DNA of 64,000 nt from Magallana gigas (Eukaryota): positions 5,704,001-5,768,000 of the forward strand of contig NC_088860.1 of the NCBI RefSeq assembly GCF_963853765.1, in the 5' to 3' direction. The notes under the pieces were generated by a model. The model was not told where the DNA came from. It searched no databases and saw nothing but the letters and a program-made list of their open reading frames with translations. The position numbers and the translations under genes are program-made. Positions 18,895-45,500 of this stretch are shown piece after piece; within the stretch, counting starts at the first letter, position 1, and every line of letters begins with the position of its first letter.

Positions 18895-20410
18895 TATATT
18901 AAAGTTTACAAAATTTCATTTATCAAATACTATTTGATAACTTAAACTAAACTTTTCAAAAATGCTAAAGTTAAAATTTATACATTTTGATTTATTTACA
19001 GTAAGATAATTTTGAAAAAAACAGCGGCTACCCACATATTCGTTTATGATTTTACATTTCATTTTATATTTGTAAACTTTGCATGCAATAACAACAATGT
19101 AACATCAATATTTAGTATCAGTAAAATTTTCCGCCAAAGTGGCATTAACAGGTCGCACTCAAAGATCAAATGTTTTATATTTTCTGGTATATTGCAATTA
19201 ATACAATTCCCATTAATGTTTTTATCCCATTTTCTAACCGATAGATTCATGGTCAACAGGTTGTGAAGTAATTCATAATTAAATTCTGATACAGATTTAT
19301 CAAATAAAGACCGAACCTTGTTCTTGAAAATTACATTAAAATAGTACTTGTCTATTTGGAATTCCTTACACCATATATTTTTCCATAATAGGTTTTTGGG
19401 ATTCCTTTTTTATATGGATGTTGTAGAAAAAATTAGACTTTTCATTTGAAGTATCTTCTAGCTTTTCTTCGAAATAGAAATGCAACTTAGTGAGCGAATT
19501 CTTGAAATTTATGGCTCGTAGATCTATTCTTGAAAGGTGCATCTTTATTGCATTTTTAACTATTAAGTACTCACATAAAAATTGTTTGTTGATGCCAAGC
19601 ATCTGTTTATGCATGTATCGTTTATTGTTTTGAAGCCATTCTCATTAAAATGTCTTTTACTTATAATAAACCACCTTTAGTCCAACTTGAAAAAAATAGA
19701 GATTTACCCTAAAAACATAAATGATGTTTTTATTGAACCAAATATTTTGATTAGCAAAATTGGTTAATGAAATATCTTTGCATTCGTTAAAGGCCACTAG
19801 AACCTCGTTACAGAACATGGGGAGGAAGTTCGATTTAAATTCTTCGTATTTTGTAATGCTTGAATTTAGCAAAAATGGAATATCGATATTATGTTTAACT
19901 ACACAAGCGTTTAAAAGTGAAGACAGACTACTTCTTTTTTGAATAATTTTCAAAACCCGTGGAGCTTTTAAAGCTTTGAGTTTTGATTCAAAGTCTGTAA
20001 TACCAATGCCGCCTTCATTTATGTTTTTAATTAAGGTGTTACGCTTGATTCGCTTTCGATTTCCCCAAATAAAGGAGAAATTACTTTATTAATACTTTTT
20101 ATTAAAGAATGTTCTGGGTTTTCTAAAATAGTAGCCGTGTACAAGACCTTTGAGATTAAAAGAGAATTTATAAGCTGACATTTTCAAAAAAAGTTAATTT
20201 TCTACTTCGCCAAGAGTCAAGTATTTTTTCAAATTCTTTAAGTTTACATAACCCGTTTCTTTCGTTATTTTCGGTTTTGTTATGCCCCATTATATCCAAG
20301 ACATTTAATTGTTTCAAAATTCTTGAAAAATTCAACTTCTTTCCTGATACAAATCCAGGACATGAATCACTTGCACATGTTGTCAAAATAATTGAAAACA
20401 TTAAGAGTTA
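18895..20410 (-). mobile_element. Degenerate 5'-truncated L1/Tx1-type LINE (ORF2 C-terminal region)
   Basis: Fragments KLKEFEKILDSWRSRKLT, FSFIWGNRKRIKRNTL...EGGIGITDFESKLKALK, CINCNIPENIKHLIFEC (zf-RVT-like) with frameshifts. Confidence 0.82.
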
Positions 20411-20434
20411 ATTGTTTGTTTTGTTATATTTCAG

Positions 20435-20499
20435 TGATGTGAACTATGTGTGTATGGACATTGAACCAAGAAATGAACACTTTCTTCAACTTAAAGTTG
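20435..20499 (+). pseudogene. Copy A exon 9 (CDVNYVCMDIEPRNEHFLQLKVG)
   Basis: TTTCAG| and |GTGAG; phase 2-1; matches 43968-44032. Confidence 0.8.
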
Positions 20500-20625
20500 G
20501 TGAGAAGTTGTTAGATAAGATGTTTTTTGAAGATTATTTAACAAAGTAAAATTCAGAAATAATCATCTTAACACCAAATCCTTTATCTTCTTTATCTTGA
20601 TTGTGTGTTTTCATTTTAAAAATAG

Positions 20626-20746
20626 GTGTTCCCTTCCGAGTGGATCTCCGCGAGTTAGAGGACCCAGAACTTTGTTTCGAGCTAATTGTGAAACCCTGGC
20701 GGATACATCCGACATCCTGCTTGATAAATACCCTATTTCTATTTAA
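20626..20746 (+). pseudogene. Copy A exon 10 with -1 frameshift
   Basis: GAACTTTGTTTCG vs GAACTTCTGTTTCG in B. Confidence 0.72.
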
Positions 20747-21689
20747 GATCTCAGTAAAAAGTTAATCATGTTATGCTGCATTGTTTTATTTTACCACTAA
20801 AATAAAACATTATTAAATACCATTATTTTTCATTATTTATTAACACATACATGTACACTGAAGTTTGCACAAAAGCATTTAGTGGTAGATATCAAGTAAA
20901 TCATTATACAGCCAGGTCCATGTTTTACAAATATATTTTGGTTTACAAAACCTCAAGATCTAACAGTAGTAACTCATAAAAGATTGATGCAGCCAAACAA
21001 AAACTGCATGACGGCAGTATATTTAAAATGTTATTTAGAGTAACAATTGGCACCAATTTAATATAATAAAATTTACAGTATTAGACAAGCTTGTCTGCGA
21101 ATGATACTGCAAATGAGAAGGTATCTTATGCAGGTTTGAGTCCTGTCAACATCTTGTTGCGTTTCACAAAAAGGCAGTCGGGAGTTAACTTGGGTTTAAA
21201 TCTACGCGTGTTAATGGGTAGGTATAAGTCCTTAGTCTGTACACAAAAATGGCGAGTGTTTAAATTGTTTCTTCAGTAAAATAAACAGAGAATTTTAATT
21301 TTGGAATTGTTTTACTTGTTATTAAGGAAACGATTATATTTATTGAAATATTTGTACATCTATGTAAAACTTTTTAAAAATACCTATTGTCCGATAACTG
21401 TTCCTATTTCTAAATAAATTAAGATTAAATCAATTTGATAAATAATGGTCTTAACTCATTAAACGTATGCAATATACATTACTACTCGTTAATGAAAATT
21501 ACCTAAAGTATGAAGAAGTAAAGATGGGGTATACCTGAGATAAACACAAAAAATAAAAAATATGCTATAATTCTAAATTAAACATGTATACAATATTACG
21601 TGTATTAAACAACAACTCCAAGTTTATACATCGTATGGATGAAAAATGACAATAACAAACCATCTCAAAATCCATAAAACGAATTACAA

Positions 21690-28495: not shown

Positions 28496-28890
28496 TGTAT
28501 CCAATTAAGCTATTGTTTACCTCGATAGAGAACGGTATATAATGTATTCAATTTGATTAAAATCAGATCGACATCGAATTAGTTGGAGCGGATCAAGGAT
28601 CTGACTTTTATCAGATTGGCATGCATATAATGTTTAGTCATCAAAATACAAATATTTTTTTGTTATGTCTGTTTTCTATGACAATAATGTCACATTGTGA
28701 ATTTTGAATTAACCTGATGGCAGTAAGTACAAAATTAACAACACGACAATCAACATATTAATGAAAAATGTAACTATCAGAAAATTTATAACTTCAATAA
28801 TGCTAAAAAAAAAGTACCGGCACTGTGCAAAAATACATCGTCCACTATAAAACATACATCCATAATTATAAGATTCTCTTGATCAATCTC

Positions 28891-28959
<69 letters not shown>

Positions 28960-29378
28960 AAGATGATGAAGCTGAAAAAATCCTAATTATATTCTACATG
29001 TATTGTTGCAATTTTTTTCCAAGTATATGTACACTATAATAATTATGTGAGGATACCCAACAGCTTTCCATAGTATACCATTTTTTTTTGTTTATAATAT
29101 AGTTCATTCGGGATCGAAATTACTAATAAATTATAAAGTCGATGAAAACAAAGACAATTTTGTTCGCTTAAACATACACTTCCGGATATCAGGATATGGA
29201 ATATACAATATTCAAAACTTTACGGATGAATAAATTAAAATTCAGTCCCCGGTCAAAATATTTTTAAAGACGTCAGTGGTTTTTTTTTCAGACCCTGCAG
29301 CATACATGCGGAAAAACCTCTCTAGTGTTAATTATCAACTAAATATGATAGGAAAACATTATTCTGTATATTTAAGCA

Positions 29379-29453
<75 letters not shown>

Positions 29454-32254
29454 ACTGAGAACTGTCTCCGCAACGGTACATATATTGATGTTTGTCATTG
29501 AAATGTTGAATTTTATTCAGTAATCAACATTTCATTTACCAATTATTCGTGGATCAAAATCATTGAGACATCTTATCTTGAAACTGACTTATATATCTAC
29601 TAATCTAAACTCAATTTATTAAGAAACATGACAAGTTGCAGGAATAAACCATATATAATTTAGGTTCAGCTGTGGCTTTATTATTTTCAATGGACCTACT
29701 GACACGAATAGAGTAGAAATACTGCATATTCTGTCAACTTTCAAATGTAATGAAGATTAATTACTACTAGTATACAATTTTGACTACTCGAGATCACCCA
29801 GTTGATGCAACGTTGTCTTCCCACTTAGCCAACATTTTGAAAAAATACAGGTAAAATACAGGTAAATTTGTTTTGGCAAAGTGGGAATGGGGTGCAGGTG
29901 GAGAACAAAAGAATTTAATTACAGGTAAGCTATAGTCTGTTTTCAGATAAAAGTCGGAGAAATAAAATATCTGTTAGCTTACAGAGGAATAAATATGAAT
30001 TGAGCTTCTGTCCTGGTACTTTATATAATTGATTCAGATGAAAATATAATTTTAGAAAATTAACTGTTACATATTCCCTTATAATTTATGCCCTTGATTA
30101 AGGTACAAATATAATTTTTTGTCTATTTTCATCATTTATTGAGATAATTATACAAGCTGCCTTTTAAGCATTGAAAAATATTGTAATTATAAGAGTCACG
30201 TTTGAAATTCTATCTATGAATCATATGGGTCATATTTCATTTCCATTTTTTTTTCAATTTTCTTCCGTTCTGATTTGAACATATTTCATTGCATTATATT
30301 GCAATGGGATTGGGCACAAGTAATAAAAACTTAATTCGTCCTCTTAATTTCTTTGGTTTCTAAGATTATATTGAATATTTCCAATCTAGATTATATGAAA
30401 TTAACAAAATACAAAAGAAAAAAACGCTTGAGTAAATTAAGTCCTTAATTATATTACTAACGGTGATACTTCACATTTTATAAGATTCATTGTATGATGA
30501 TGAATACATCATTAGTTAATAAGATAAAATCATCTTTTGTTTTGTTTTTTTAAAGTTGACCTGCACCTGAATATCAGGCATTTTTACTTCTAACAGTCAA
30601 TAAAACAATTATAAGAAGTCATAATTTTCAGGCTTTTGATTCTGTAAATTAATCATAATTAATAATGCTTATCAATTTCAATTTGTTTATTCTCTCAAAC
30701 CATTAAAATACACATGTACATGAGATACAAAACTGTGTTATTTGCTTTAAATTGTAATGTCAAAAGTTTAATTATTTATAATATTGTATTGGAACATAGA
30801 AATACATGTGTCTAGTCTATTCTTTAAAAATTGCTGATCTATTAATGTATATATACATCCAATTTATAAACAGTTTGTTAATTTACATAAATGTTTTAAT
30901 CATGCAAGTACTGGCATTGGTTAATACTTATAAAATGTGTTATGTAATAATCTTGTTACAGAAGTCGTTCAAGGAAAGTTGAATACATCGTGTGAAATTG
31001 CTATTCATTAGTCTATGATTTTCAATCATTACTTGTCTCTTTTATCAATAAAACAATTTTTAATGCAAATTATAATATAATGCATTCACAAGAATCGCTA
31101 AATGTTAACTAACTTCGAGTATCTATCTTTTTCCAAATGCGCTACATTAATCTCAACCGCCTTACTTTTGGTATAAGAAGCCTTTTGACTCTGGGATGGT
31201 ACCATGATTAATGACTGGAATGGTTAGTCAATATATAAAAATATAACGGTCACCCAACACAACTCGAGCACTATCGCCTGGCCCTGCTGAGATGCCTTGG
31301 GAGACTACTAGTATATGCCAGTAATTAGAGACCCGTGTTAAAGGTGTAACTTCTAATTAAAAATGGAATACAATATTTTTAAAACCTGTGAAATAATAGG
31401 TTCACATTGATATTGTACCTTTTTACTCGAGCATAAATGAATTGCAGAGTTGTGTACTGGGCCTATATTTGCTTCTTTTTTTTTAAATTCGAAATGGTCT
31501 TTGTTATGTTTATCATTTTCAAACAGCATCAGCGAAGAATGTTTGATTTTAATTAAAAGTAATCAATATCATGTAGGAACTAATGTGAATCGAGTCAGCA
31601 TGATGACCTCAAATCTATGCACTTTAATTTTGGTGAATGCGAGCCCAGAAACTCAAAATGATTTACACTGAGCAATAAACGATGTTTCTATGTTAGCTGT
31701 TAAACGCGGAAAAAGTCATCTGTCAGCAAAAGCAAACTTTTCCCCCAAAGGATCAGCTCTTAAACATGCTTCTAAATACAAGGACGAAGTTATAAAATTT
31801 GTCGAAGAATACACCTATCACTTGTACTTTAAATGTTTTGAATTCATGTTGATAAAATAAATGAGTTGATTTACTTGACAAGGAATTTACTCTCATAACT
31901 AACATGCATGGTGTACTGTATCTTAGATTACATATAGTACCTCTAAAAAGTATCTGTTTAGCATCATATACATGTTTCTCATGTTACAATCGTTTGAGTT
32001 TAAATTCAGCTTGACTTGAACATACCGTATTACAGTGAGTGTTGAACCATGCAAAAGTAATGCGCAGAAACGATGCTATGAAACTTTTCCATTCGAATAA
32101 AAACTAATGCATATTTTGATGCATCATTTTTCTATAAAAAAGCACAAACGTTTGAATATAGGCAATAGCTTAGCCAGTTGGTTGCTCAGATTAATGCAAC
32201 CCTTCAGCAAGCATACACGGTGTTTGGACCTTTACAGGGAGAAAACTATCAAAG

Positions 32255-32300
32255 ATGCAAACCACTCCTGTTCTGTTTCTGCTGTCCCTGCCAGCAATAG
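32255..32300 (+). CDS. Copy B exon 1 (A-type), signal peptide MQTTPVLFLLSLPAI
   Basis: Near-identical duplicate of 5396-5441; G|GTAAGT. Confidence 0.7.
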
Positions 32301-33997
32301 GTAAGTTTTATTTGAAGAACATGTATTAAATTCATTGTTTAAATATCAAAGTAGTATATGCTGTAATTTTCACGTCGGAAATTTTTACCGGGAACTTGAA
32401 TTTACGACTTTTAAAAATGACTAAAAAGATGATTGTTTATAAACTTCTGTTTGTCATATATTTGTTGGTAACGCAATTCATTGGGGTGTATTAAAGCGAA
32501 ATAATATATTATCACGGTAGAAAACAGTTTGCTATACATTTTTCACTAGATAAATCGTTCTTATAAAACTCAATGATTCATCTTAATCTTATTCATCACT
32601 AAGAATTTAGTACCATGCGAAATTGACACAATAATTTGCTGCTAAATAAAAATCTATTAAAAGTAGCTCACTTTGCTTCATTTACGTTCGGCGTGTATAT
32701 GTTGTCTGAATATGTCGACATAAAACGTATTTCATTCACTTGCTTCGAAAGTGTCTCATTGCAAAGATGCGACCGGCGAAGCGCGAGGATGCGATGGCGA
32801 AAGTGCGAAGGCAAAGGAGCTTAGCTCCCCCCCCCTCGGAAAAATTCATTATTAATATAATTTTATACAGTAAATGGCGAGGGGGGGGGGGTCCGGATCC
32901 CACTCCTCCCTGGAAAATTTAATTTTATATAATAAAATTTCCAAAGTAAGCCTCGGAACCCCCCCCCCCTTCCAGTTTGTCTTCTGCCTCAGATGTCATT
33001 ATATACAGCTAAAATTGTATTTAAACGATTATAAGCTTTACAATTATAAAAAGGCGAAGGCGAAAGCGCGAAGATGCGAAGGCGAGAGTGCGAATTTGCG
33101 AAGGCGAAGGAGCGATAGTTGTATTGCTTCTTTGCCTTCGCAACATTGCACTTTCGCATCTTTGCGCTTCGCCGTTGCATCATCCCACTTTCGCTTCACC
33201 GTGGTACCTTCGCACTTTCGCCTTCGCAACTATAGGCGAAAATGCGAAGGTCGAAGTGGCCCCATCAGAACACCATAAATAGGAGATGATTATATGAAGA
33301 AGAGGAGAAATGATTCAGCTCAAGTTATGTTTTCGTTGCTAAAATTGATACTTGACAGACGCGTCAAAAAGCCAATGTGACCTTGACAACATCTTCGCTA
33401 GCCAAGGTTTTCTAATCCGCACCGCTTCTCAAAAGTAAGATGCCTTGACAAATGCAAACTAAAACAATAATATTAACGATGAGCATAAATTGTAATAAGC
33501 AATGAATTGTCTTTGCCAGTTTGACAGTTGTTTTAATGGATGGTCATGTATTTCCTATAAAATGAATATCTAACCTTTTGACAATGGTTAGGTTTTGAAT
33601 AATGATGACGATTAAATTATTCTGGATGAATTTAGTTTAAACGTTTTCCCAGAAAACAGATGGGCAATAAGATAAAATTGTAATTGCCGGAAAACATCGT
33701 ACGGTACAACATATTGAAGGTTATTTACTGATGAAGCTCATCAAATCGTTGTCAATGATTAGGATACTTAATTGTGCGATACAAACTATATTTCTGACCT
33801 TAAAACCGATATCAAGTATTTGGCAATCCTTATACATGTAACTCTTTATTTAGAACGCGTGGTTTGTAACAACGCACTTTGGGAAAAAAATTGAAGTTCG
33901 TTAAATTTGGGACCAAGTCAACGCACTTTGAATTTTTGAAGTATGGTTGATGTACACTCTTAACGCACTTTGAAAAAACTTTGTAAAGTGCGTTGAC

Positions 33998-34028
<31 letters not shown>

Positions 34029-37000
34029 ATTTTAAAGTGTGTTGATTTTGTCTAAAATTTAACGCGCTTTGAAAAAAATTTCATAGTGCGTAAATTATTA
34101 AAGTGCGTTGCCACAATGGTTCCCTCTCATCCTTGTTAATTTAAAAAATACACGATGTCAGTGGACAACGCCCCCCCCCCCAAAAAAAAAACAAAAAAAC
34201 AAAAAAACAAAAAAATCGAAAGGTAAAATTAAATATTATTTTGCACCAATCGCTACTTCCATAGCCAAAAAAAGTAAAAAAAAAATCATTTACTTTTTAT
34301 ACAACACCTACATGTACCTAAGGATCTTTCTTTAATAATATTTACTATATTCACTGCTAGAAAAAATTTAAAAAGTTATACATTGAAACTTTGGCCATGA
34401 CATTTGCCGTCACCTTCTTGCTTTCTGTTGTTCACTGTACAAGTAGATCGATCTAGAAATGACACACAACGAAGAAATGTTAAAGAATAAAATCAAAGTT
34501 TAATTAAAAAGATGAAAGTTTGTACCAGTACTTTAACTTTAGCCCTTGTTGAATCAGAATGAAGATTAAAATATTAATTTTTAAAATCAGAGTAATTAAA
34601 GTTACATTTTCTTATACAGAGTTAAAAATAACTCACCTGATGACAAGAATGCCCTGTGAAATCTTCTTTGCTCTGTCACGGAGGGGGTGTTGACCAAAAT
34701 GTTTGTTGGCCGAGCCCTTGCTGGGGTCCCAGTCAGGGGGGTAGTACTTGTTTTGTGACTTTCTCTCAGCCTAAAACATTAAACAAAATATATCTTTGAA
34801 GGTGTGACCAATTTGAGGGTGATACCAATAAAACAATCACATTTTCCTTATCAGTTGGCATCTATAGATTCATGTGAAACATAAACAGTTGGATCTGCTT
34901 ATCTATTTATAATGATATATTCATCATGCTAATGATCACATGCTCAGACAATATCTTTGAAGTCAATGAAGTGATTGATTTTAATCAGATATGAACATGA
35001 CTCTTTTGCCGAGATTCCATTGCAGGATATTCAAAATGGTCAAGAGTAGGGACTGCCATCTTGAAACACAATTTTCAAGTTCATAGGGTATAATTTGTAA
35101 TCTCTTCAAAGGCTATTATTCTTCTGTACATTTTCGCTCTCACAGAACTAATTCGTCCTCTAAAATACATGGCAAAAAGAAAAATAAATTGCAAAACTGG
35201 AGCAAGCAAGGCAAATGAATATTCCAATTTAAACCGCAACAAGCTACATAAAATGGATAATAGAGCAGAAATTCAGAAAAATGATTATGAAAGACTGTCC
35301 AAAGATTAAGTGAAGGCATCAGTCAAATATCAAGCTAAGGCGAATCTCTATAGAGAAGAAGGATCAACCAAACTGTCTTGGTTATCTAAAACACTTCACG
35401 GGAGTTCGAATTTTTATCAATAAAAAGCCCAAAAACTTACTTTATTGACTGATTCATGAGCTTTGCTCTTTTATAACCCCATATTACCACATTAACTGTT
35501 TTTGCAACAAAATCGCTGCCACTTTTAACATCACATTTGAAAATTCGCTGTTAATGGTTGCCATGTTAATGATAACATCCGAGACATTCCGAGTGCGATT
35601 TACGACAAAATGGCAGGCAAATTAAAGCATATATTTTACCAAAATGCCTTGGTAAGACTCATTAAATGGATATTTTGTAGACTAAACTACACATGCATGT
35701 TCAAAAAGGTTTGTTATGTATAAAAATGTGTTTTTCCTCTGCAGTTTATTTTTAACAGACTTAAAATCGATGCAAAGCTAATCCGCTTTGCGGCTGCTAC
35801 ATTGCAAGTATATGGGACGAATTCTTACTGTGACCTGAGTGTAGCCTGGTCACGGTAAGATTATTCTTTCTAATAGCTCATGGGTCAGTCAATAAAGTAA
35901 GTTTTTTTGGCTTTATTGAAAAAAATTCGAACTCCTGTGAACACTTTCACACTGCTACAATTTTGTAAGGCAGTTACGACAGAGTGGAAAAACAACTGAG
36001 AGTCGAATCAGAACTGTTATGATGTTATTTTGAAAATAACTACACTATGATGACTATCAAATTTATTCATATGTCAGAATGGTTAGAAAAATGTTCTCAG
36101 ATTTTTTTGTCAGTGCAATTATCATACCATGTTTACTGTACGATTCAACCAATATATACTGTAAAACTAAATAGTACACGTTTATAAACAAAAGTGTGTC
36201 AAAAACGTTAGACGTACCATTTTGACAGGAAGTTGGAGTTCCAATACTCTAGTCACTGTCGTTCAGACGCTTGTTTACGATTGGCTGTTCGTTTGCTCTA
36301 AAACGCGTTCGCCCTTGACGCCTTTCGCTCTAGTTTTGGTATGTCCGTTCGCTCTTGAAACCGTTCGCACTGTGTCCGTTCGCCTTAATTTTATATAGGA
36401 TTAATTATAATTTATATATTTTTGTGTATTCTTGTCAATTTAAACATATATAATTAATGAAAACAATACCGCCCTTTCTACTTCTACCTACATAATATTC
36501 ACCATGGTTGACAGTAGTTTGATACAGTTACATACAGTTACATGTTCCATTTCCGTATATATCTCATTTAGAGATCAAAGGATTGTGTGATGTAAATTCT
36601 TTAAAGATAGAATAGGTGATAATCATCTGCTAAGCTTCTGAATGTGCCAATTAAAGTCTCAAAGTCTTTAATTGTTTAAAAAACACCAAGCAAATCATTA
36701 TAAAAACAAGAAGACGGTTATCGACAATGTAGGCCTACGGCAATAAAATCTTACAATTTACATATACCAATTACGTCATTTTTGATGAAGGAAAAACATA
36801 TTATATACGAATAATTAATAAAAGTTAACAAGTTTTAAGTTAAAAGTAAATGAAATAACTTATAATATTGTTTATTTATAAACAAGGAGCGAACGAGGTT
36901 TAAGGCGAACGATTATTTGGGCGAACGATAATTAGAGCGAAGGGACCTAGAGCGAACGGACCAAGGCGAACATGTGGATAGGGCGAACGCACCCGATACC

Positions 37001-40000
37001 AATTTTCAATTTTTTTTTCTGATATAGGTGGAGACAAATCATTTAGCCAGTTTGATATGTAGTTTATCAAATATGATATTTTAAAAAGCAAAAATGGTTT
37101 TAAATTTTTTAACTCTGGAGATTCTGAAAAAGTTTTTTTAGGTAAACTTGAATTTGAAAGACTGATCCCAAAGGAGAGTTTGGTCTACTGAGGAATCAAA
37201 CTAATTACCAAATTATTAGTCCCCTACCGGTTTTCACTGGAGGGGACTATAGTTTTTCTCTGCGTCCGTCTGTCCATCGGTCCGTCTGTCTGTCTCACTT
37301 CAGTTTCCACACTTTTTTTCTTTATGCGTTTAAGGAATAATATGAAATTTGCTGAACAGCTTCAAAATGTCAAACTACAGATCAAGTTTACACTTTTGTA
37401 GCGTTGGTTGATATATTTTCGAGAAAATTAATTTTTTATATTCCAGTTTTTTAATGTTCGGGTTCGAAATTATGCATAACAGTGCATTGTTTTCACAATT
37501 TCCACAAACCGGTAGGGGACGTGTATTGCTTATGCAATACTCTCAGAATGCTTGTTGTTTCTGTAAATGTGTATTTACGGGTTAATTAAAAGTTTAAATT
37601 TAATTTTTTCAAAATAAAGTACCTCCTCTTTTTTTTACTCTCTATAATACTAAATTGCCTGTCCAAGATATTTATGCAGCACCTTTTGACCATTATATAT
37701 AATGTTATACCTACTGTGAAAAAAAATGCAATTGAAATCAATGAAAGGAAAAATATCCAAGATACCTTCATTGAATCATTATTTAGCTTTTTCTCTCTGA
37801 TTGATTGACAGGAACTAATACAGATTTAATTCTTATGACAGATTAAATTCTTATGGAGTTTTATAATTTCAAAGTTGATGTAAAGTTTTATGATACAGAG
37901 CTTTCAATTATTTATTCTGTTAAAATTTAATGTTTATTTTTAAAATATCTTTCTCTTTAAAAAACAAAAAACTGTTAAATGAATTTGAAACCATTTAAAA
38001 GTGTTTGATATAATTATTCCGATATAGATTCAAGAGTTCTTAATCAATAATTATAAATAAATTACATGTATTGAATAATCATTTTTTACTGCAGTGTGGG
38101 GGCGGTGCAACATCCCAGCCTACTTTCACGGTGACTGGTACAGTCGAGAATCGGGTACAGACATCAAAACTCTGGTCAACGCCGACAAGTGGGACAGTAA
38201 TGAGGATGAAACACAGCTAGAGTGTGTGGACATTTTCATCCACTCCAACCCCGGGCTTCAGCAAGACGGAGACAATGTGACTATGCTTATGGTCAAAACG
38301 TAAGACTTCATGCAGAAAATGATTATTGAATCAATAACTTTTTCATTAGCCTAGTTGACAAATGATGTCCAAAAAATTCGGTATTCTCTAAACAATAAAA
38401 TTATTGTGTGAGGTTGGTAATTAATGTGGAATTAACTTTATATTTTGTTGGTTAAGGTGTGCTTAAGATCATGAATTACTCATGAATATTAGAGTTTGCA
38501 TACTCAGTAAATGTCAGATCTTTTGTATTTATCATGTATACATTTCTCTAGGTGAAACTTTTTAACGTAGATGTTTAATAATATATCCTAAAATAAAATT
38601 TTTGATTTTTCAGAAAGGAGCCTGTGAAAATGACTTTATGTTCTGTTTTATTGCAGGGGAGGGAGTAATTTGAACACATGCTACATGTGTGTCGATGTCT
38701 TGTGGAGAACTCCAAACATTCTACAATATAGACAAGGTATGAATAATATCAACAGACTAAATATTGAAAACAAGAGTATGATAATTAAACTAAAAAAAAG
38801 TAAAGTTTCTATAAACTCTTAGTACAAATAAGTTTCATGATATGCACCATGAATGTAGATTGACAATGTAAGTTTGTGACTCAGTTTTAGGGCAAGTTTG
38901 AATAAAAACAGAATTTCAAATGTTGAAGAGTCAACACTGATTGTGATTGTGTGTCTTTAAATAGAGGACTGTATAACAGCGCGGTCTAGGAGCCAGATTT
39001 CGCTGAACGATTCCTGTAAGTCGATGAACCCTTGGTACGGGCTTCCCAGCATTGATGTCACTTTCACCATGTTCAGTAAGTGTATTAAGCCATTCTATGC
39101 AGATTAATTTGACTATTGTGACCATTACCTATGCAAACAAGTAAAATGAATACAAACGTCATGAACTGTATATATGTATGAAGGCTGTACGAAGAAAACA
39201 ATGATATCGAAAGTAGATCTGTTAAAATGATCCATTTTTGCGATTATTCATTGAGCACCTGTGGCCTGCTGGATTAGAAAGTGGTCAATGGCTCCACTGT
39301 CAGGGTTCATATTCCAATAGACCATAAATTAATTTTATTGCAATTTTTATCATTTTTATCATTTATATGAAAAAAAAAGTATAGTACATGTATCTTCAAT
39401 TTGTCAACTCACATTATATTTGTATTTTCCAGAACAATCCCTAGAGAAGATTAACTGTGTAACAACATTTGAGGGGGTGTATCAGTTTTCCTATGAAGTG
39501 GATACCGGTGGTGGAGGTATCTGTAACCACCCAGATAGCCAGATCAAAGCTTGCCAAGAACCTGGATCTCAATATGTCGACAACGATGTGTTTGTCATGA
39601 CGTATCGGAAGTGCCTTGATGTGTCGACGTCAAAAAATGAACGTATGTCATGTTTGCAACTTTACAAAAATAGGTTTATGAGAAATTGAATATGGCAATG
39701 ATTTTTATCTTTTTTTCAAAATAAAACATATAAGAGTTCTGAGCTTTGAAATTGAAAAAATGATCTCATCTTAATTACATATATACTTAAAGGTACTTTT
39801 TATACAAAATCATGAATAATTTCTCAATATTTTCAGTGACTGAAATGTGACATTTGTGTAAGATGTGTGGTTTGATTGTTGCTGATAGTTTGTTTTTGAA
39901 TGTTGCTGATTATAATAATTTGTATTTTTCACTAATAGTTTAATATATGTTAATTAGAGATTCGGTACCAGTGTATGGGTTCGTGGTTCGCGGTGAGGAA

Positions 40001-42315
40001 TGGAATCGGCTACACCTATGCTGCTGTTGCTGACACCGTGGAACAGGATACCAGAGAAAAATTCAAGTGCATGGTAATTGATACATGACATTGTATTGTT
40101 TTAACAATTATTACCAAATTCTGATAAAAAATTACTGCAATTCTTCCAGATTGAAATACACTTTGTCCTCATACACATGTACATGTAGTTGAAGAATCGT
40201 CAAGCCAACAAACCTTCATTGTTTGATTTATCTTATAGATGACATTGAAGAACCAGAAAGATGCCAACAATCAGATCCGATGGGTCATGTCTCGTTTCCC
40301 CGATTGCACAAGTTTGAGTGGCGTTTACAGGGGTCCACTCAAATTAGTTTTAACCAGAAGTAAGTCAATTTCATGTCTACCCGTGCTGAATGCGAGACTC
40401 TCATCTCCATCTACACAGGACCGGTCAGACTAGTTCTCACGAAAAGTGAGTAATTTTTTTAAGAAACAGCTCACAATGCAGAGCATGAGATGATTGCTAA
40501 AGCAGGTTATATTATCATGTTTTTAAATAACATGACAATATCCATACACACTTTCAACATAGAGTTGAATGCTACACCAACAATTTTTTGCTGGATTGTT
40601 ATTGTTATTGGTGATTGATGTATGTAAAAAAAATTCTTTTATTTTAAAGAGAAAATTGAAAAAAAAAGTTTTGTTGACTATAAAACATTAGAATTTAAAT
40701 TTGCTGTCAGTAAGTATATTGTTTCAAAAAGGTAATGTGTTTTCTACCAGGGAATTATTTTAAGAAATATTCATATATATAAAAAACAAATATTGAAAAC
40801 CTGGCACGAATTGAAACAAAAAAGCAATGTATTTGATTTTATGGAATACGAATACCTCATCGTTAAAAAACATTATTTAAATTGTTTAAACTTTAAAATC
40901 AAATAGATATCTCATTGACAGTTACAGGAATTTTATTAATTTTTATTTTTTTTCTATACAATAATTTATTTATTTTTAAATTGTTTGTAGTTCCAATTTC
41001 CAACGATTACAATACCCCTCGCTGCAGTTTCGATAAGGATATAGTTGGCAATTGGTTCATAAAGCGTAATAGAATTACTATAGATGATAAAATGCATTTC
41101 CCTCCTGCACTGAATCAAATGGATTTCTATTTGTCCTGTCAGCAAACAAATGGAACTCGATATCTTCTGTCACAAACAGTACTTGGAAAATGGTAAGATC
41201 TTTCTGTCTTATCATTTCAACAGTTATTTAGAGAAAATGCATACATAGAATTAACANNNNNNNNNNNNNNNNNNNNNNNNNNNNNNNNNNNNNNNNNNNN
41301 NNNNNNNNNNNNNNNNNNNNNNNNNNNNNNNNNNNNNNNNNNNNNNNNNNNNNNNNNNNNNNNNNNNNNNNNNNNNNNNNNNNNNNNNNNNNAGATAATA
41401 CCTCCGCTGAGGCTCTCTAGATATACATCACCTGGGGTGCCAGGGCCCCCCCCCCCCCCCCCCCCCCCCCGGATCAGTAATGCTATTCAGCGGTATAAAT
41501 AAATCATACATCTGTACGTTATGTACAAAATATATATTTTCATTAGTATTTATAATTGTATTTTATTAAAGCGTAAATAGACGTATATATGAATTAGCAC
41601 ATTGTATATATCTCTGCATACATGTATATAGTAATAACAATACTACTGTAAATTCCTTATATTACGCGAGTACTTAATTCCGCGATCCCGCTTTTTTGTA
41701 TCAAATCGCGAGAATATAAAATCGCAAACGTTGAACTTTTCTCCTTATTTCTTATAGTTTTCAACTCTCAGAAAATAATGGCGAGATTTTAAAATCCGCA
41801 AAGGATGCTTCTCGCGATTTTACGCGGATATTAATTCCTCGCGATTAATTAGGAATTTGCAGTATTCGGGAAGGTAACATTCAGTCATTGATATAATGTT
41901 CGTATCANNNNNNNNNNNNNNNNNNNNNNNNNNNNNNNNNNNNNNNNNNNNNNNNNNNNNNNNNNNNNNNNNNNNNNNNNNNNNNNNNNNNNNNNNNNNN
42001 NNNNNNNNNNNNNNNNNNNNNNNNNNNNNNNNNNNNNNNNNNNNNNNNNNNNNNNNNNNNNNNNNNNNNNNNNNNNNTCCCGATCCTCTCAAATTGTCGT
42101 TTAACTGCATTCCACCTGTATCTCAAAGGACCGTGTAGTGAGCGACCAGCGCGCTAGTTTCCCTTCGTCATCGAAAGCAAGATTTTTGTCTTGCCTAGAT
42201 GGCCCAGTGGTAAGCGCGGTGGCCGCTCACTGCTAGGAGAATGGGTTCCAGAGGTCGTGAGTTCAAGCCCCGGCCGGGGCGGAGGTGGAGCTCCAAAAAG
42301 GTGAATATCTCTGTG

Positions 42316-42369
<54 letters not shown>

Positions 42370-44280
42370 GTTTTCAGTAGACAATAACACAATATTCTCT
42401 CAAATTTAATCCAGAGAGCGCTTTCACCTGATNNNNNNNNNNNNNNNNNNNNNNNNNNNNNNNNNNNNNNNNNNNNNNNNNNNNNNNNNNNNNNNNNNNN
42501 NNNNNNNNNNNNNNNNNNNNNNNNNNNNNNNNNNNNNNNNNNNNNNNNNNNNNNNNNNNNNNNNNNNNNNNNNNNNNNNNNNNNNNNNNNNNNNNNNNNN
42601 NNNNNATATCACTCAGTATAAATAATCAAAAAAAAATAAAGAAAATGAACAGTTTCTATTTCATTTTATATTATTTTAAACTTTGCATGCAATAACAACA
42701 ATGTAACATCAATATTTAGTATCAGTAAAATTTTCCGCCAAAGTGGCATTAACAGGTCGCACTCAAAGATCAAATGTTTTATATTTTCTGGTATATTGCA
42801 AATAATACAATTCCCATTAATGTTTTTATCCCATTTTCTAACCGACAGATTCATGGTCAACAGGTTGTGAAGTAATTCATAATTAAATTCTGATACAGAT
42901 TTATCAAATAAAGACCGAACCTTGTTCTTGAAAATTACATTAAAATAGTACTTGTCTATTTGGAATTCCTTACACCATATATTTTTCCATAATAGGTTTT
43001 TGGGATTCCTTTTTTATATGGATGTTGTAGAAAAAATTAGACTTTTTATTTGAAGTATCTTCTAGCTTTTCTTCGAAATAGAAATGCAACTTAGTGAGCG
43101 AATTCTTGAAATTTATGGTTCGTAGATCTATTCTTGAAAGGTGCATCTTTATTGCATTTTTAACTATTAAGTACTCACATAAAAATTGTTTGTTGATGCC
43201 AAGCATCTGTTTATACATGTATCGTTTATTGTTTTGAAGCCATTCTCATTAAAAGGTGTTTTTATTGAACCAAATATTTTGATTAGCAAAATTGGTTAAT
43301 GAAATATCTTTGCATTCGTTAAAGGCCACTAGAACCTCGTTACAGAACATGGGGAGGAAGTTCGATTTAAATTCTTCGTATTTTGTAATGCTTCAATTTA
43401 GCAAAAATGGAATATCGATATTATGTTTAACTACACAAGCGTTTAAAAGTGAAGACAGGCTACTTCTATTTTGAATAATTTTCAAAACCCGTGGAGCTTT
43501 TAAAGCTTTGAGTTTTGATTCAAAGTCTGTAATACCAATGCCGCCTTCATTTATGTTTCTAATTAAGGTGTTACGCTTGATTCGCTTTCGATTTCCCCAA
43601 ATAAAGGAGAAAATTATTTTATTAATACTTTTTATTAAAGATTGTTCAGGGTTTTCTAAAATAGTAGCCGTGTACAAGACCTTTGAGATTAAAAGAGAAT
43701 TTATAAGCTGACATTTTCAAAAAAAGTTAATTTTCTACTTCGCCAAGAGTCAAGTATTTTTTCAAATTCTTTAAGTTTACATAACCAGTTTCTTTCGTTA
43801 TTTTCGGTTTTGTTATGCCCCATTATATCCAAGACATTTAATTGTTTCAAAGTTCTTGAAAATTTCAACTTCTTTCCTGATACAAATCCAGGATATGAAT
43901 CACTTGCACATGTTGTCAAAATAATTGAAAACATTAAGAGTTAATTGTTTGTTTTGTTTTATTTCAGTGATGTGAACTATGTGTGTATGGACATTGAACC
44001 AAGAAATGAACACTTTCTTCAACTTAAAGTTGGTGAGAAGTTGTTAGATAAGATGTTTTTTGAAGATTATTTAACAAAGTAAAATTCAGAAATAATCATC
44101 TTAACACCAAACCCTTTACCTTCTTTATCTTGATTGTGTGTTTTCATTTTAAAAATAGGTGTTCCATTCCGAGTGGATCTCCGCGAGTTAGAGGACCCAG
44201 AACTTCTGTTTCGAGCTAATTGTGAAACCCTGGCGGATACATCCGACATCCTGCTTGATAAATACCCTATTTCTATTTAA
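32255..44280 (+). CDS. Copy B: intact mosaic gene for a 425-aa secreted Cys/Trp-rich protein (DUF7044/7042/7043, PTHR22255-like)
   Basis: Join 32255-32300, 38095-38299, 38657-38736, 38965-39075, 39433-39642, 39958-40073, 40239-40359, 40991-41192, 43968-44032, 44159-44280 = 1278 nt = 426 codons including stop, with no internal stop and all phases compatible. Use of exon 1 at 32255 and the terminal exon are inferred. Confidence 0.75.
32760..33278. mobile_element. Duplicate of the 6128 MITE, left TIR deleted
   Basis: Deletion joins CTCATTGC to GCAAAGATG via TGC microhomology. Confidence 0.78.
34637..34770 (-). pseudogene. CCDC130: CCDC130/YJU2B (CWC16-family splicing factor) second coding exon, orphaned
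   Basis: TTTTAG| ... |GTGAG on - strand; translates AERKSQNKYYPPDWDPSKGSANKHFGQHPLRDRAKKISQGILVIR, matching the recalled N-terminus of CCDC130; no downstream FEMP exon seen in window. Confidence 0.9.
35397..35939. mobile_element. MITE with TIRs of about 66 bp (CACGGGAG.../...CTCCTGTG) and 7-bp TSD AACACTT; P-superfamily-like
   Basis: TIRs and identical 7-mers at 35390-35396 and 35940-35946; CANRG terminus and 7-8 bp TSD are typical of the P superfamily. Confidence 0.7.
36128..36130 (-). pseudogene. CCDC130: CCDC130 start-codon-only first coding exon (AAACATG|GTATGA)
   Basis: Phase-0 donor directly after ATG supplies the missing Met for the 34770 exon. Confidence 0.6.
36283..36999. mobile_element. 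Foldback/MITE-like element with GTTCGC repeats at left and GCGAAC repeats at right
   Basis: Several inverted-orientation copies of the hexamer flank an AT-rich core; left terminus decayed. Confidence 0.55.
37216..37556 (+). mobile_element. Helentron-derived MITE (pearl/DINE-like)
   Basis: subTIR GTCCCCTACCGG / CCGGTAGGGGAC, (CGTC/TGTC)n microsatellite, 3' hairpin GTATTGC...GCAATAC, ends CTTGTT. Confidence 0.75.
38095..38299 (+). CDS. Copy B exon 2 (VWGRCNIPAYFHGDWYSRESG...TMLMVK)
   Basis: CTGCAG| and |GTAAG; open; ORF track 38094-38303. Confidence 0.9.
38657..38736 (+). CDS. Copy B exon 3 (GGSNLNTCYMCVDVLWRTPNILQYRQ)
   Basis: TTGCAG| and |GTATG; phase 2-1. Confidence 0.88.
38965..39075 (+). 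CDS. Copy B exon 4 (EDCITARSRSQISLNDSCKSMNPWYGLPSIDVTFTMF)
   Basis: AAATAG| and |GTAAGT; phase 1-1. Confidence 0.82.
39433..39642 (+). CDS. Copy B exon 5 (KQSLEKINCVTTFEGVYQFSYEVDTGGGGICNHPDSQIKAC...)
   Basis: TTTTCCAG| and |GTATG; ORF track 39420-39689. Confidence 0.9.
39958..40073 (+). CDS. Copy B exon 6 (QIRYQCMGSWFAVRNGIGYTYAAVADTVEQDTREKFKCM)
   Basis: AATTAG| and |GTAATT; phase 1-0. Confidence 0.88.
40239..40359 (+). CDS. Copy B exon 7 (MTLKNQKDANNQIRWVMSRFPDCTSLSGVYRGPLKLVLTR)
   Basis: TTATAG| and |GTAAGT. Confidence 0.88.
40371..40445 (+). pseudogene. Orphan 3' half of A-type exon 7 (MSTRAECETLISIYTGPVRLVLTK) with its own GTGAGT donor
   Basis: Near-identical to 16925-16999; begins 11 nt after the B exon 7 donor; out of frame with B exon 7. 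Confidence 0.88.
40991..41192 (+). CDS. Copy B exon 8 (A-type; IPISNDYNTPRCSFDKDIVGNWF...SCQQTNGTRYLLSQTVLGK)
   Basis: TGTAG| and |GTAAG; open; ORF track 40915-41196. Confidence 0.88.
41644..41864. mobile_element. TA-flanked MITE (Tc1/mariner-like); left-deleted copy at about 18110-18260
   Basis: TACTGTAAATTCCT..TTACGCGAG vs CTCGCGATTAATTAGGAATTTGCAGTA. Confidence 0.7.
42190..42320 (+). mobile_element. tRNA-derived SINE ending in (TA)n
   Basis: A box TGGCCCAGTGG, B box GAGTTCAAGCC, GC-rich body, (TA)n tail. Confidence 0.55.
42655..43945 (-). mobile_element. Duplicate of the L1/Tx1 LINE fragment in copy B intron 8
   Basis: Same peptides as 18895-20410. Confidence 0.82.
43968..44032 (+). CDS. 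Copy B exon 9 (CDVNYVCMDIEPRNEHFLQLKVG)
   Basis: TTTCAG| and |GTGAG; phase 2-1. Confidence 0.8.
44159..44280 (+). CDS. Copy B exon 10, probable terminal coding exon (GVPFRVDLRELEDPELLFRANCETLADTSDILLDKYPISI*)
   Basis: AAATAG| acceptor; open to TAA 44278-44280. Confidence 0.68.
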
Positions 44281-45500
44281 GATCTCAGTAAAAAGTTAAT
44301 CATGTTATGCTGCATTGTTTTATTTTACCACTAAAATAAAACATTATTAAATACCATTATTTTTCATTATTTATTAACACATACATGTACACTGAAGTTT
44401 GCACAAAAGCATTTAGTGGTAGATATCAAGTAAATCATTATACAGCCAGGTCCATGTTTTACAAATATATTTTGGTTTACAAAACCTCAAGATCTAACAG
44501 TAGTAAATCATAAAAGATTGATGCAGCCAAACAAAAACTGCATGACGGCAGTATATTTAAAATGTTATTTAGAGTAACAATTGGCACCAATTTAATATAA
44601 TAAAATTTAGAGTATTAGAAAAGCTTGTCTGCAAATGATACTGCAAATGAGAAGGTATCTTATGCAGGTTTGAGTCCTGTCAACATCTTGTTGCGTTTCA
44701 CAAAAAGGCGGAAACTCAGTCGGGAGTTAATTTGGGTTTAAATCTACGCCTGTTAATGGATAGGTATAAGTCCTTAGTCTGTACACAAAAATGGCGAGTG
44801 TTTAAATTGTTTCTTCAGTAAAATAAACAGAGAATTTAAATTTTGGAATTGTTTTACTTGTTATTAAGGAAACATTTATATTTATTGAAATATTTGTACA
44901 TGTATGTAAAACTTTTTAAAAATACCTATTGTCCGATAACTGTTGCTATTTCTAAATAAATTAAGATTAAATCAATTTGATTTGATAAATAATGGGCTTC
45001 AATCATTAAACGTATGTAATATACATTACTACTCGTTAATGAAAATTACCTAAAGTATGAAGAATTGAAGATGGGTATACCTGAGATAAACACAAAAAAT
45101 AAAAAAAATATGCTATAATTCTAAATTATGCAGGTATATAGTATTACGTGTATTAAACAACAACTCCAAGTTTATACATCGTATGGATGAAAAATGACAA
45201 TAACAAACTGTCAACCATCTCAAAATCAATAAAAGGAATTACAAATTCAAAGCAGAGCAACACAGACCTCTAAAAAGATAGAGGTAGGATCAGGTGCCTA
45301 GAAGGAGTAAGCATCCTCTCCTGAGTATCACCCTCCGTGCGCCCAATGTCTTATCGGTAAAAATATCATTATCGGGGAAAATGTCGTAATTTGGGGAAAA
45401 CGGAGAAAAATGCGTGGACAATTCGGTATTTAATCAATATTCCATAGCGGAGCAATCACGAACCTCTGGAAAACCCCAGAGGCAGGATCAGGTGCCTAGG

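What the first reader, a model, noticed from the sequence alone, without database searches (positions are those of the whole stretch)
32255..44280. Mosaic gene built by cassette replacement: A promoter/exon 1, foreign paralog exons 2-7, A exons 8-10, all in frame
Seen: similarity to copy A stops at TAATTAAAAAG (8011/34511), 134 bp before exon 2, and resumes at TCATGTCT in the middle of exon 7 (16925/40371). The 5.9 kb between carries exons 2-7 of a diverged paralog (about 73% aa identity in exon 5, far lower in exons 2 and 4, introns unalignable). Conserved intron phases yield a stop-free 425-aa ORF with a signal peptide. No separate signal-peptide exon was found inside the block. Inference: exon shuffling between paralogs swapped the N-terminal domains while keeping regulation and the C-terminus. 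This is a diversification mode expected for secreted recognition or immune-type proteins.
Basis: partly seen in the sequence, partly recalled or inferred. Interest (0 to 1): 0.75.

Follow-up and report, generated by a model that had tools for sequence, protein, structure and literature searches.

The report
Expressed mosaic oyster gene, donor found
In the Pacific oyster genome, one copy of a duplicated secreted-protein gene had its exons 2-7 replaced by a copy of the same exons from a third paralog 50 kb away; the chimera is spliced in frame and expressed, a clear but not unprecedented case of exon shuffling.

Summary
Copy B (28496-48930) resembles copy A (1815-25517) except for 34512-40370.

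That 5.9-kb block is 90-97.5% identical to the reverse complement of a third paralog, C. C lies about 50 kb downstream, head-to-head with an intact CCDC130/YJU2B gene.

Both junctions are non-homologous, with 1-2 bp of microhomology:
- The left one joins A-type intron 1 to CCDC130 intron sequence.
- The right one joins C exon 7 plus 12 nt of its intron to the middle of A-type exon 7, leaving a half-exon relic.

The donor's own signal-peptide exon is missing in B. A 720-bp interspersed repeat sits in its place.

The 10-exon, 425-aa ORF is real:
- A 1694-nt public RNA contig shows every predicted splice.
- That includes 32300>38095, 40359>40991 and exon 8>9 across the three N gaps, which are all intronic.
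- RefSeq XP_011453013.3 (Magallana gigas LOC105346213) is identical to the model.
- M. angulata has the same mosaic.

Copy A is a transcribed pseudogene with one nonsense codon and two frameshifts.

The protein has a signal peptide and three lipocalin-like barrels (DUF7044, DUF7042, DUF7043). The swap exchanged barrels 1-2.

The gene is already annotated; I found no description of its mosaic origin. No immune role is shown.

The parts
28496..34511 (+). A-type 5' flank of copy B: promoter region, exon 1 and most of intron 1
   Evidence: 88-94% BLAST identity to copy A 1815-8011; substitution divergence 3.6-6%
31921..32300 (+). 5'UTR plus exon 1; CDS 32255-32300 encodes the signal peptide MQTTPVLFLLSLPAI, donor GTAAGT, phase 1
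   Evidence: mRNA contig L030 nt 2-384 match here at 97.4%, against 93.4% to copy A; RNA contig in run X15 joins 32298>38093 with GT..AG
34511..34512 (.). Left junction: A-type intron 1 joined to donor sequence from a CCDC130 intron, at most 1 bp microhomology
   Evidence: Three-way alignment; the junction string occurs once in the genome
34512..40370 (+). Block copied in inverted orientation from paralog C (C8:5791937-5803136)
   Evidence: BLAST 90-97.5% to the reverse complement of extended coordinates 99136..87937; 3.4% substitutions overall
34636..34770 (-). Relic of the CCDC130/YJU2B exon encoding residues 2-46, carried in with the block
   Evidence: Pfam Saf4_Yju2 E 2.7e-6, 27.7 bits, just under the 27.8-bit cut-off; intact gene copy at C8:5803214+; translation
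35693..35708 (+). Alternative first exon (MHVQK) of RefSeq isoform X3, inside a B-specific insertion; encodes no signal peptide
   Evidence: P0123 sequence and pattern match; no joint seen from here in the four runs laid
36280..37000 (.). Interspersed repeat occupying the place of the donor's 264 bp that hold its ATG, signal peptide and splice donor
   Evidence: At least 56 genomic copies at 80-95% identity; alignment to C
37218..37551 (.). Very high-copy repeat inserted in B only; supplies the first exon (..QFPQT, 37496-37510) of an Ensembl/UniProt model
   Evidence: Absent from C; word depth about 4e5 in DNA run X12
38095..38299 (+). Exon 2 (donor type)
   Evidence: 97.6% to C, 60.8% to A
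38657..38736 (+). Exon 3 (donor type)
38965..39075 (+). Exon 4 (donor type)
39433..39642 (+). Exon 5 (donor type), first half of DUF7042
39958..40073 (+). Exon 6 (donor type)
40239..40359 (+). Exon 7, entirely donor type (identical to C), with its own donor GTAAGT
40370..40371 (.). Right junction: donor intron 7 (12 nt) joined to the middle of A-type exon 7, 2-bp microhomology TC
   Evidence: Three-way alignment; string unique in the genome; read through in UniProt models from two other assemblies
40371..40445 (+). Relic 3' half of A-type exon 7, now inside intron 7
40991..41192 (+). Exon 8 (A type), start of DUF7043
   Evidence: 96.5% to A, 58% to C
41257..42605 (.). Span holding the three N gaps, all within intron 8
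43968..44032 (+). Exon 9 (A type)
44159..44356 (+). Exon 10 (stop codon ends at 44280) plus 3'UTR with an AATAAA signal
5396..20765 (+). Copy A: transcribed pseudogene of the A-type paralog. TAG at 8241-8243 (exon 2), 2-bp insertion near 17562 (exon 8), 1-bp deletion after 20672 (exon 10)
   Evidence: independent RNA contig L031 carries the same TAG

Best explanation
Copy B is Magallana gigas LOC105346213, a chimeric gene.

Origin. An A-type paralog was first duplicated in tandem into A and B. In B, about 8.9 kb (measured in today's copy A) was then lost: the end of intron 1, exons 2-6 and the 5' half of exon 7. In its place sits an inverted copy of part of the paralog C locus, which lies 50 kb downstream. 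That copy runs from a CCDC130 intron, through C's upstream region, to 12 nt past C exon 7. Both joints carry only 1-2 bp of microhomology. The event was therefore non-homologous. I think a single replicative template switch (FoSTeS/MMBIR type) or a break repaired with a templated insertion is most likely, at about 0.5. Homologous recombination and gene conversion are excluded.

Why it works. Introns 1 and 7 are both phase 1 in this family, and the donor's exon 7 kept its own splice donor. The cassette of exons 2-7 therefore splices in frame between A-type exon 1 and exon 8.

Later change. A repeat took the place of the donor's own first exon, so the A-type first exon supplies the signal peptide.

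Product. The protein is 425 aa, has a predicted signal peptide and models as three lipocalin-like beta-barrels. Barrels 1-2 (DUF7044, DUF7042) come from C. Barrel 3 (DUF7043) and the tail are A-type. C itself is longer and ends in a hydrophobic tail that B lacks.

Status of each step. Shown: anatomy, donor, junctions, splicing, expression, presence in several assemblies. Inferred: order of events, repair mechanism, secretion, ligand-binding role.
For: Donor and direction:
- B 34508-40372 matches the reverse complement of C8:5791937-5803136 at 90-97.5%.
- The match includes a CCDC130 exon that belongs to a larger CCDC130 gene at the C locus, with further exons downstream and is cut off in B.
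- B keeps a half A-type exon 7 relic.

Junctions:
- Three-way alignments show at most 1 bp and 2 bp of microhomology and no filler.
- Each junction string occurs once in the assembly.

Mosaic pattern per exon:
- A-B identity is 97.8-100% in exons 1 and 8-10.
- B-C identity is 97.6-100% in exons 2-7.
- All other pairs are 51-80%.

Transcript:
- Logan RNA contig L030 (1694 nt) aligns as B 31921-32300, then all nine further exons at the predicted borders.
- A 968-nt RNA contig in another study joins 32298>38093 with GT..AG and has no mismatch in B exon 2.

Annotation and other assemblies:
- XP_011453013.3 is identical to the model.
- M. angulata XP_052706484.1 has the same mosaic.
- K1Q9G9 and A0A8W8IXM1, from other M. 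gigas assemblies, read across the right junction.
- 14 DNA-type runs from several studies (20 holder runs span 13 studies in all) hold at least 82% of the sampled words of 40239-41192.

Loss of the donor's exon 1.

Relative age: B-C divergence is 3.4% and A-B is 4.9%.

Protein: Pfam; AlphaFold model with pLDDT 83.8; barrel matches.
Against: - No listed DNA contig of run X12 bridges the left junction. Its contigs stop at 34499 and start at 34511, as expected at a repeat boundary in a de Bruijn graph, but this is not direct proof.
- One event cannot be told from two (insertion, then deletion).
- A-B divergence varies from 1.3% to 8% along the flanks, so the order 'duplication first, replacement later' rests on noisy numbers.
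- The X15 RNA contig has an A-like 5'UTR upstream of 32217, and RefSeq isoform X1 has the A-type residue at position 6. Some transcripts may therefore start at copy A's exon 1, or B alleles may share A-like variants there.
- dN/dS between B and C is about 0.8 on only 12 differences. Selection on B is therefore not shown.
Confidence: 0.85

Rival explanations
1. Two separate events. A duplicated fragment of the C locus first inserted into intron 1 of the A-type copy. A later deletion then removed the distal end of the insert together with A-type exons 2 to mid-7, creating the right junction. The product is the same; only the history differs.
For: Each junction alone looks like an ordinary end-joining scar. 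The block has clearly gone on changing after arrival: three repeat insertions, and large length differences from C.
Against: It needs the deletion to end by chance 12 nt past a splice donor. No intermediate allele was seen in the assemblies and transcripts sampled. It is no more parsimonious than a single event.
Confidence: 0.3
2. Homology-driven exchange, that is, interlocus gene conversion or unequal crossing-over between paralogs, as a recurrent diversification mechanism.
For: A and C share intron positions and phases. B alleles carry a mixture of B-reference and C states at 6 of 8 variable residues, which could reflect later short conversion tracts.
Against: Neither breakpoint lies at corresponding positions of the two paralogs. 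The left one joins A intron 1 to a CCDC130 intron; the right one joins C intron 7 to the middle of A exon 7. Microhomology is only 1-2 bp. The donor is inverted, so a crossover would invert the interval rather than replace a cassette. The shared allele states are as easily explained by young mutations private to the reference haplotype.
Confidence: 0.03
3. Assembly artefact: the A-like and C-like sequences were joined wrongly near gaps.
For: Three N gaps lie 0.9-2.2 kb from the right junction. The DNA contigs laid did not bridge the left junction.
Against: Full-length spliced mRNA joins A-type and C-type exons at both ends. Three M. gigas annotation sets and M. angulata carry the same 425-aa or junction-spanning models. 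Misassembly normally happens within shared repeats, not at non-homologous joints.
Confidence: 0.01
4. Reverse polarity: B is the ancestral arrangement, and A and C inherited parts of it.
For: None beyond the formal symmetry of a three-way mosaic.
Against: B carries a cut-off piece of CCDC130, whereas the C locus has that exon followed by further CCDC130 exons. B also carries one and a half exon 7s. C continues into exons 8-14, which have no counterpart in B.
Confidence: 0.02

Closest known systems
Young chimeric genes formed by partial duplication and fusion (for example Drosophila jingwei and Sdic, and chimeric duplicates surveyed in D. melanogaster); named from my own knowledge
   Same: A duplicated piece of one gene is joined to another, keeping one partner's promoter and first exon. 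The product is transcribed and in frame. The parent copies persist nearby.
   Different: Here both partners are paralogs of one family, and an internal cassette was replaced rather than two genes fused end to end. The domain architecture therefore stays the same while two of the three domains change origin. One parental-type copy (A) has decayed.
Exon shuffling of symmetrical phase 1-1 modules in secreted proteins (Patthy's rule); from my own knowledge
   Same: The exchanged unit (exons 2-7) is bounded by two phase-1 introns and encodes whole domains of a secreted protein.
   Different: Only the left break is intronic in both partners. On the right, the recipient was cut inside an exon, and the frame is saved because the donor brought its own splice donor.
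Microhomology-mediated template switching (FoSTeS/MMBIR) and templated-insertion repair, as described for human structural variants; from my own knowledge
   Same: A deletion is combined with an inverted copy of nearby sequence (50 kb away), with 1-2 bp microhomology at both joints and no target-site duplication.
   Different: The mechanism is inferred from the scars alone. End joining of a captured fragment would leave the same scars.
Interlocus gene conversion in immune and recognition gene families (MHC, bivalve antimicrobial peptide genes such as big defensins, PMC7203481)
   Same: Sequence moves between paralogs of a secreted-protein family.
   Different: Conversion needs homology at the tract ends and does not import neighbouring-gene fragments. 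Both conditions fail here.
Lipocalin/calycin-fold proteins with several barrels (for example mouse APCDD1, PDB 8e0r; Treponema Tp0751, PDB 5jk2)
   Same: Each of the three modelled domains superposes on 8-stranded barrels: Z 10.5 (rmsd 2.3 over 93 residues) for domain 1, Z 7.0 for domain 2, Z 6-6.5 for domain 3.
   Different: Sequence identity is 3-13%. Only the domain-1 match stands above the background level the tool describes. No ligand or function is known for DUF7042-7044.

Membership tests
DUF7044-DUF7042-DUF7043 protein family (Pfam PF23071, PF23069, PF23070) | Each domain scores above its Pfam gathering cut-off (27 bits), in the order 7044-7042-7043 | tested here: met
   P0113, an allele of B: 61.3, 79.9 and 56.4 bits at residues 19-130, 155-294 and 305-389. 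Saccostrea and other homologs show the same order.
DUF7044-DUF7042-DUF7043 protein family | Conserved cysteine framework shared with homologs | tested here: met
   Eight cysteine columns are invariant (C128, C156, C178, C188, C208, C223, C255, C279), and C95 is nearly so, across 18 homologs from several bivalve genera and other animals.
Chimeric gene by exon shuffling | Different exons of one gene have different closest relatives | tested here: met
   Exons 1 and 8-10 are 96.5-100% identical to A and 57-62% to C. Exons 2-7 are 97.6-100% identical to C and 51-80% to A.
Chimeric gene by exon shuffling | Donor locus identified, with polarity established | tested here: met
   Donor at C8:5791937-5803136 beside an intact CCDC130 gene. 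B carries a truncated CCDC130 piece and a half-exon relic.
Chimeric gene by exon shuffling | Phase-compatible boundaries giving an open frame | tested here: met
   Introns 1 and 7 are both phase 1; the ORF is 425 aa.
Chimeric gene by exon shuffling | The chimeric transcript exists | tested here: met
   L030 covers all ten exons. The X15 contig shows the 32298>38093 joint. RefSeq isoform X2 is identical to the model.
Interlocus gene conversion / NAHR | Tract ends lie within sequence homologous between donor and recipient | tested here: not met
   Both joints connect non-corresponding sequences with 1-2 bp shared.
Microhomology-mediated template switch or templated insertion | Short (0-5 bp) microhomology at both joints, a nearby template, deletion at the recipient, no target-site duplication | tested here: met
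   These features do not exclude simple end joining of a captured fragment.
Retrocopy-derived chimera | The inserted part lacks introns and carries a poly(A) tract | tested here: not met
   The block keeps donor introns 2-6 and the donor's upstream region.
Lipocalin/calycin fold | Eight-stranded antiparallel barrel superposing on solved lipocalins | tested here: inconclusive
   The model is confident (pLDDT 83.8). Z is 10.5 for domain 1 but only 6-7 for domains 2 and 3, within the range the tool calls common. Foldseek on the whole model found nothing at E<=0.001 in PDB.
Immune or recognition protein | Induction by infection, binding of non-self ligands, or signs of diversifying selection | not tested
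   I found no literature on the family or the gene. dN/dS of about 0.8 on 12 differences is uninformative.

The most novel reading that the evidence does not exclude
The replacement rescued a dying gene. If the nonsense codon now seen in copy A's exon 2 predates the A/B duplication, then copy B also carried it. Importing intact exons 2-7 from paralog C would then have restored an open reading frame. That would be a pseudogene repaired by a non-homologous patch from a paralog. The evidence does not exclude this, because B's original exons 2-7 are gone. It is not favoured. A's exons 3-7 and their splice sites are otherwise intact, and A's two frameshifts lie in exons 8 and 10, where B is intact, so they arose in A alone.
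Probability: 0.1. Interest if true: 0.65.

Novelty: new member of a known kind. Interest (0 to 1): 0.5.

Why it matters
Here every stage of an exon-shuffling event can still be read:
- the donor locus, with its neighbouring gene as a marker of direction;
- the recipient backbone;
- both repair scars;
- a half-exon relic;
- the later loss of the donor's own first exon to a repeat;
- the decay of the sister copy;
- the spliced, annotated product in two closely related oysters.

It shows that an in-frame domain swap between paralogs can arise from a non-homologous accident. Conserved intron phases and an imported splice donor were enough to keep it in frame.

For oyster genomics it flags LOC105346213 as a chimera, so trees built from the whole protein will mislead. 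It also marks this DUF7042-7044 locus as structurally unstable.

It does not open a new kind of mechanism.

Tried and rejected
- Foldseek of the whole model against PDB and Swiss-Prot AlphaFold models found nothing at E<=0.001 apart from one borderline fascin-3 row with TM 0.12. Only the domain-wise VIA-align search was informative.
- An exact left-junction string in JGI metagenome contigs gave no hit, which is uninformative.
- Literature searches for DUF7042-7045, the run and protein accessions, and LOC105346213 or LOC128181940 returned nothing relevant. The only hits came from a placeholder term of mine. A broader search on oyster gene conversion and exon shuffling gave no paper on this locus.
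- The last protein search, restricted to the A-type C-terminal part (residues 296-425), found only the gene's own cluster. No intact A-type ortholog could be found to date the event.
- The genome search with copy A's replaced segment returned only a small repeat, so no second A-type copy was seen. That search scores few candidates.
- DNA contigs of run X12 did not bridge the left junction.
- Transposon capture (Helitron or Pack-MULE style) was considered and dropped. The block ends do not look like element termini, and a simple insertion does not explain the 8.9-kb loss.
- A complete model of paralog C was only roughly built. The exon 11 acceptor is probably misplaced.

Full report
**Setting.** The window is G000:C8:5704001-5768000. 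A RefSeq protein of Magallana gigas sits on a contig of the same length (51,133,819) and is identical to the gene model below. The genome is therefore the Pacific oyster.

**1. The observation**

A self-comparison of the window shows a segmental duplication: copy A at 1815-25517 and copy B at 28496-48930, with 88-98% BLAST identity. In between, only a 170-bp exon core aligns.

Splice-site analysis gives ten exons in B, all with AG/GT borders:
- 32255-32300
- 38095-38299
- 38657-38736
- 38965-39075
- 39433-39642
- 39958-40073
- 40239-40359
- 40991-41192
- 43968-44032
- 44159-44280

Together they total 1278 nt, a 425-aa ORF without stops. Pfam finds DUF7044, DUF7042 and DUF7043 above their cut-offs.

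**2. The gaps**

The three N runs all lie in intron 8 (41193-43967). The sequence pieces between them are collinear with copy A. A public mRNA contig splices 41192 directly to 43968. Order, orientation and reading frame therefore do not depend on the gaps. I did not try to fill them.

**3. The donor**

A Saf4/Yju2 (CCDC130/YJU2B) exon lies on the minus strand at 34636-34770, inside the foreign block. In the whole genome, a CCDC130-type gene and one more DUF7042 gene lie 27-35 kb beyond the window's end, head-to-head.

I fetched 50 kb downstream. B 34508-40372 matches the reverse complement of extended coordinates 99136 to 87937 (C8:5791937-5803136) at 90-97.5% identity. The match ends at the same two points where similarity to A ends. 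I call this paralog C.

C has a signal-peptide exon, exons 2-9 with the same intron positions and phases, and further exons ending in a hydrophobic tail. It is about 630-650 aa by a rough model.

Per-exon nucleotide identity shows the mosaic clearly:

| Exons | B versus A | B versus C |
|---|---|---|
| 1 and 8-10 | 96.5-100% | 58-62% (exons 1, 8, 9) |
| 2-7 | 51-80% | 97.6-100% |

**4. Direction**

The CCDC130 exon at the C locus is followed downstream by further CCDC130 exons. In B the piece stops 125 nt into the next intron. B also holds C's complete exon 7 plus, 12 nt later, the 3' half of an A-type exon 7 (40371-45), still followed by its old splice donor. These relics mean that B is an A-type backbone that received C sequence, not the reverse.

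**5. The junctions**

Three-way alignments show that neither joint lies at corresponding positions of the paralogs.
- Left: A-type intron 1, at the point 134 bp before A's exon 2, is joined to a CCDC130 intron. At most one base is shared.
- Right: C intron 7, 12 nt after the donor GTAAGT, is joined to the middle of A-type exon 7. Two bases (TC) are shared.
- There is no filler sequence and no target-site duplication.
- Both junction strings occur once in the assembly.

This excludes gene conversion and unequal crossing-over. It fits a microhomology-mediated template switch, or end joining with a templated insertion. A two-step history (insertion, then deletion) cannot be excluded.

The cassette is bounded by two phase-1 introns and brought its own exon 7 donor. 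That is why the frame survives.

**6. Changes after arrival**

C's first exon (MAVLQTARVLLLFFLPVM, donor in phase 1) lies in a 264-bp segment that is absent from B. In its place B has a 720-bp element present in at least 56 copies in the genome.

B also has two other repeat insertions, at 35546-35739 and 37218-37551. It lacks 0.5-, 3.2- and 2.7-kb stretches that are present in C.

Substitution divergence is 3.4% for B-C (4509 sites) and 4.9% for A-B (11553 sites). The A-B figure ranges from 1.3% to 8% along the flanks. The replacement is probably somewhat younger than the A/B duplication, but the numbers are noisy.

In exons 2-7, B and C differ at 12 of 843 nt. That is 8 of 280 residues, with dN 0.0136 and dS 0.0176. 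These exons diverge less than the non-coding part of the block (Fisher p = 2e-4). With so few changes, no selection claim is safe.

**7. Expression and independent support**

- The protein search returned a 425-aa Logan protein, P0113. Its 1694-nt contig, L030 (SRR12564944), aligns as B 31921-32300 at 97.4%, against 93.4% to A. All nine further exons then follow at the predicted borders, and the contig ends after an AATAAA signal.
- Reads laid on 32200-38199 show one RNA contig of run X15, from another study (968 nt, word depth 332). It carries a GT..AG joint 32298>38093 and has no mismatch in B's exon 2, including the two B-specific bases. Its remaining 738 nt equal exactly the summed length of the rest of exons 2-7. 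This is my arithmetic; the tool did not show it.
- The 90% cluster of P0113 holds several annotated proteins:
  - RefSeq XP_011453013.3 is identical to my model, and older versions of the same gene are also present.
  - M. angulata XP_052706484.1 is 425 aa with nine differences.
  - K1Q9G9 and A0A8W8IXM1, UniProt models from other M. gigas assemblies, read through the right junction (...LTRSKSISCLPVLNARLSSPSTQDR).
- Fourteen DNA-type runs from several studies (the 20 holder runs span 13 studies) hold at least 82% of the sampled words of 40239-41192.
- One weak point remains. The contigs listed for DNA run X12 break at 34499 and 34511 rather than bridging the left joint. This is expected at a repeat border but is not proof.

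**8. First exons**

L030 uses B's own A-type promoter and exon 1. The X15 contig has an A-like 5'UTR upstream of 32217, and RefSeq isoform X1 differs from X2 only by the A-type residue at position 6. Either some transcripts start at copy A's exon 1, 32.7 kb upstream, or B alleles share A-like variants there. I cannot tell which.

RefSeq X3 starts at 35693-35708 (MHVQK). A UniProt model starts at 37496-37510. Both lie in repeat insertions, and neither encodes a signal peptide. No joint from either was seen in the four runs laid.

**9. Copy A**

Copy A is broken in three places:
- TGG>TAG at a conserved Trp in exon 2 (8241-8243)
- a 2-bp insertion in exon 8 (about 17562)
- a 1-bp deletion in exon 10 (after 20672)

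An independent spliced RNA contig, L031 (SRR14803154), carries the same TAG. A is therefore a transcribed pseudogene, and B is the only intact carrier of the A-type exons 8-10. A search restricted to that part found no other protein.

**10. The protein**

An AlphaFold model built with 18 homologs has pLDDT 83.8 and pTM 0.78. It shows three beta-rich domains at residues 23-153, 157-299 and 310-425.

Whole-model Foldseek searches were empty or weak. VIA-align matched each domain to 8-stranded lipocalin-like barrels:
- Domain 1: Tp0751, Z 10.5.
- Domain 2: APCDD1 and others, Z about 7.
- Domain 3: lipocalins, Z 6-6.5.

Only the first match stands clearly above background.

ESM Atlas neighbours are DUF7042-7044 proteins of molluscs and arthropods. 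The exon 7/8 border falls between barrels 2 and 3, so the swap exchanged two whole domains. The function is unknown, and I found no paper on these domains or this gene. A secreted binder of small hydrophobic ligands is an inference from the fold only.

**11. Verdict**

The finding is real and well supported. The gene is already annotated as an uncharacterised protein, and I found no description of its mosaic origin. It is a clean, young, expressed example of a known process.

Noticed in passing
window 12704-16434: A 3.7-kb tandem array with strong C-over-G skew fills intron 5 of copy A. B's intron 5 is only 315 bp, and C's intron 5 carries 2.7 kb that B lacks. The same intron has thus expanded independently in different paralogs.
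   Followed up: partly
window 9160-9500: A palindromic element of about 330 bp in copy A's intron 2 has at least 40 genomic copies at 95-99% identity. It looks like a recently active MITE.
   Followed up: no
window 42669-43940, minus strand: Open-frame pieces of 79-115 aa on the minus strand inside intron 8 look to me like a degenerate non-LTR retrotransposon (reverse-transcriptase tail region). The same pieces occur in copy A's intron 8. I judged this by eye and did not run it against Pfam.
   Followed up: no
window 45501-49668 and 49668-53724: A further tandem duplication of about 4.1 kb (90-93% identity) lies just downstream of gene B. It is also related to copy A 22916-25517.
   Followed up: no
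window 18302-18447 and 41908-42077: Copies A and B each have an N gap at the same homologous position. Copy A's gap has (TA)n-type runs on both sides, and copy B has a (TA)24 run further on at 42319-42366.
   Followed up: partly
window 34636-35400, minus strand: The imported CCDC130 exon keeps an open frame and its upstream region. Raw poly(A) reads of run X21 show faint cover there with the first mate on the + strand. This could be antisense transcription towards B's exon 1, or reads of the true CCDC130 locus (95% identical) laid here.
   Followed up: no
L030 and proteins P0112, P0113, P0126-P0131: B alleles from different sources differ at up to 9 of 425 residues. At 6 of the 8 sites where the reference B differs from C, P0113 has the C state. 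The reference haplotype therefore carries several private changes, or short B/C exchanges continue.
   Followed up: partly
L031 nt 891-965: The last segment of the copy A transcript contig matches B's relic half exon 7 (40371-40445, 97.3%) better than A's own exon 7 (92.7%). This could be an assembly chimera or exchange between A and B.
   Followed up: no
G000:C2:44026550-44076733: At least 13 DUF7042 hits fall within 50 kb on contig C2, marking a large tandem cluster of this family elsewhere in the genome. Intronless members with an ShK-like cysteine motif and a hydrophobic tail lie on C3 (L009, 652 aa, intact) and C6 (L008, frame broken).
   Followed up: partly
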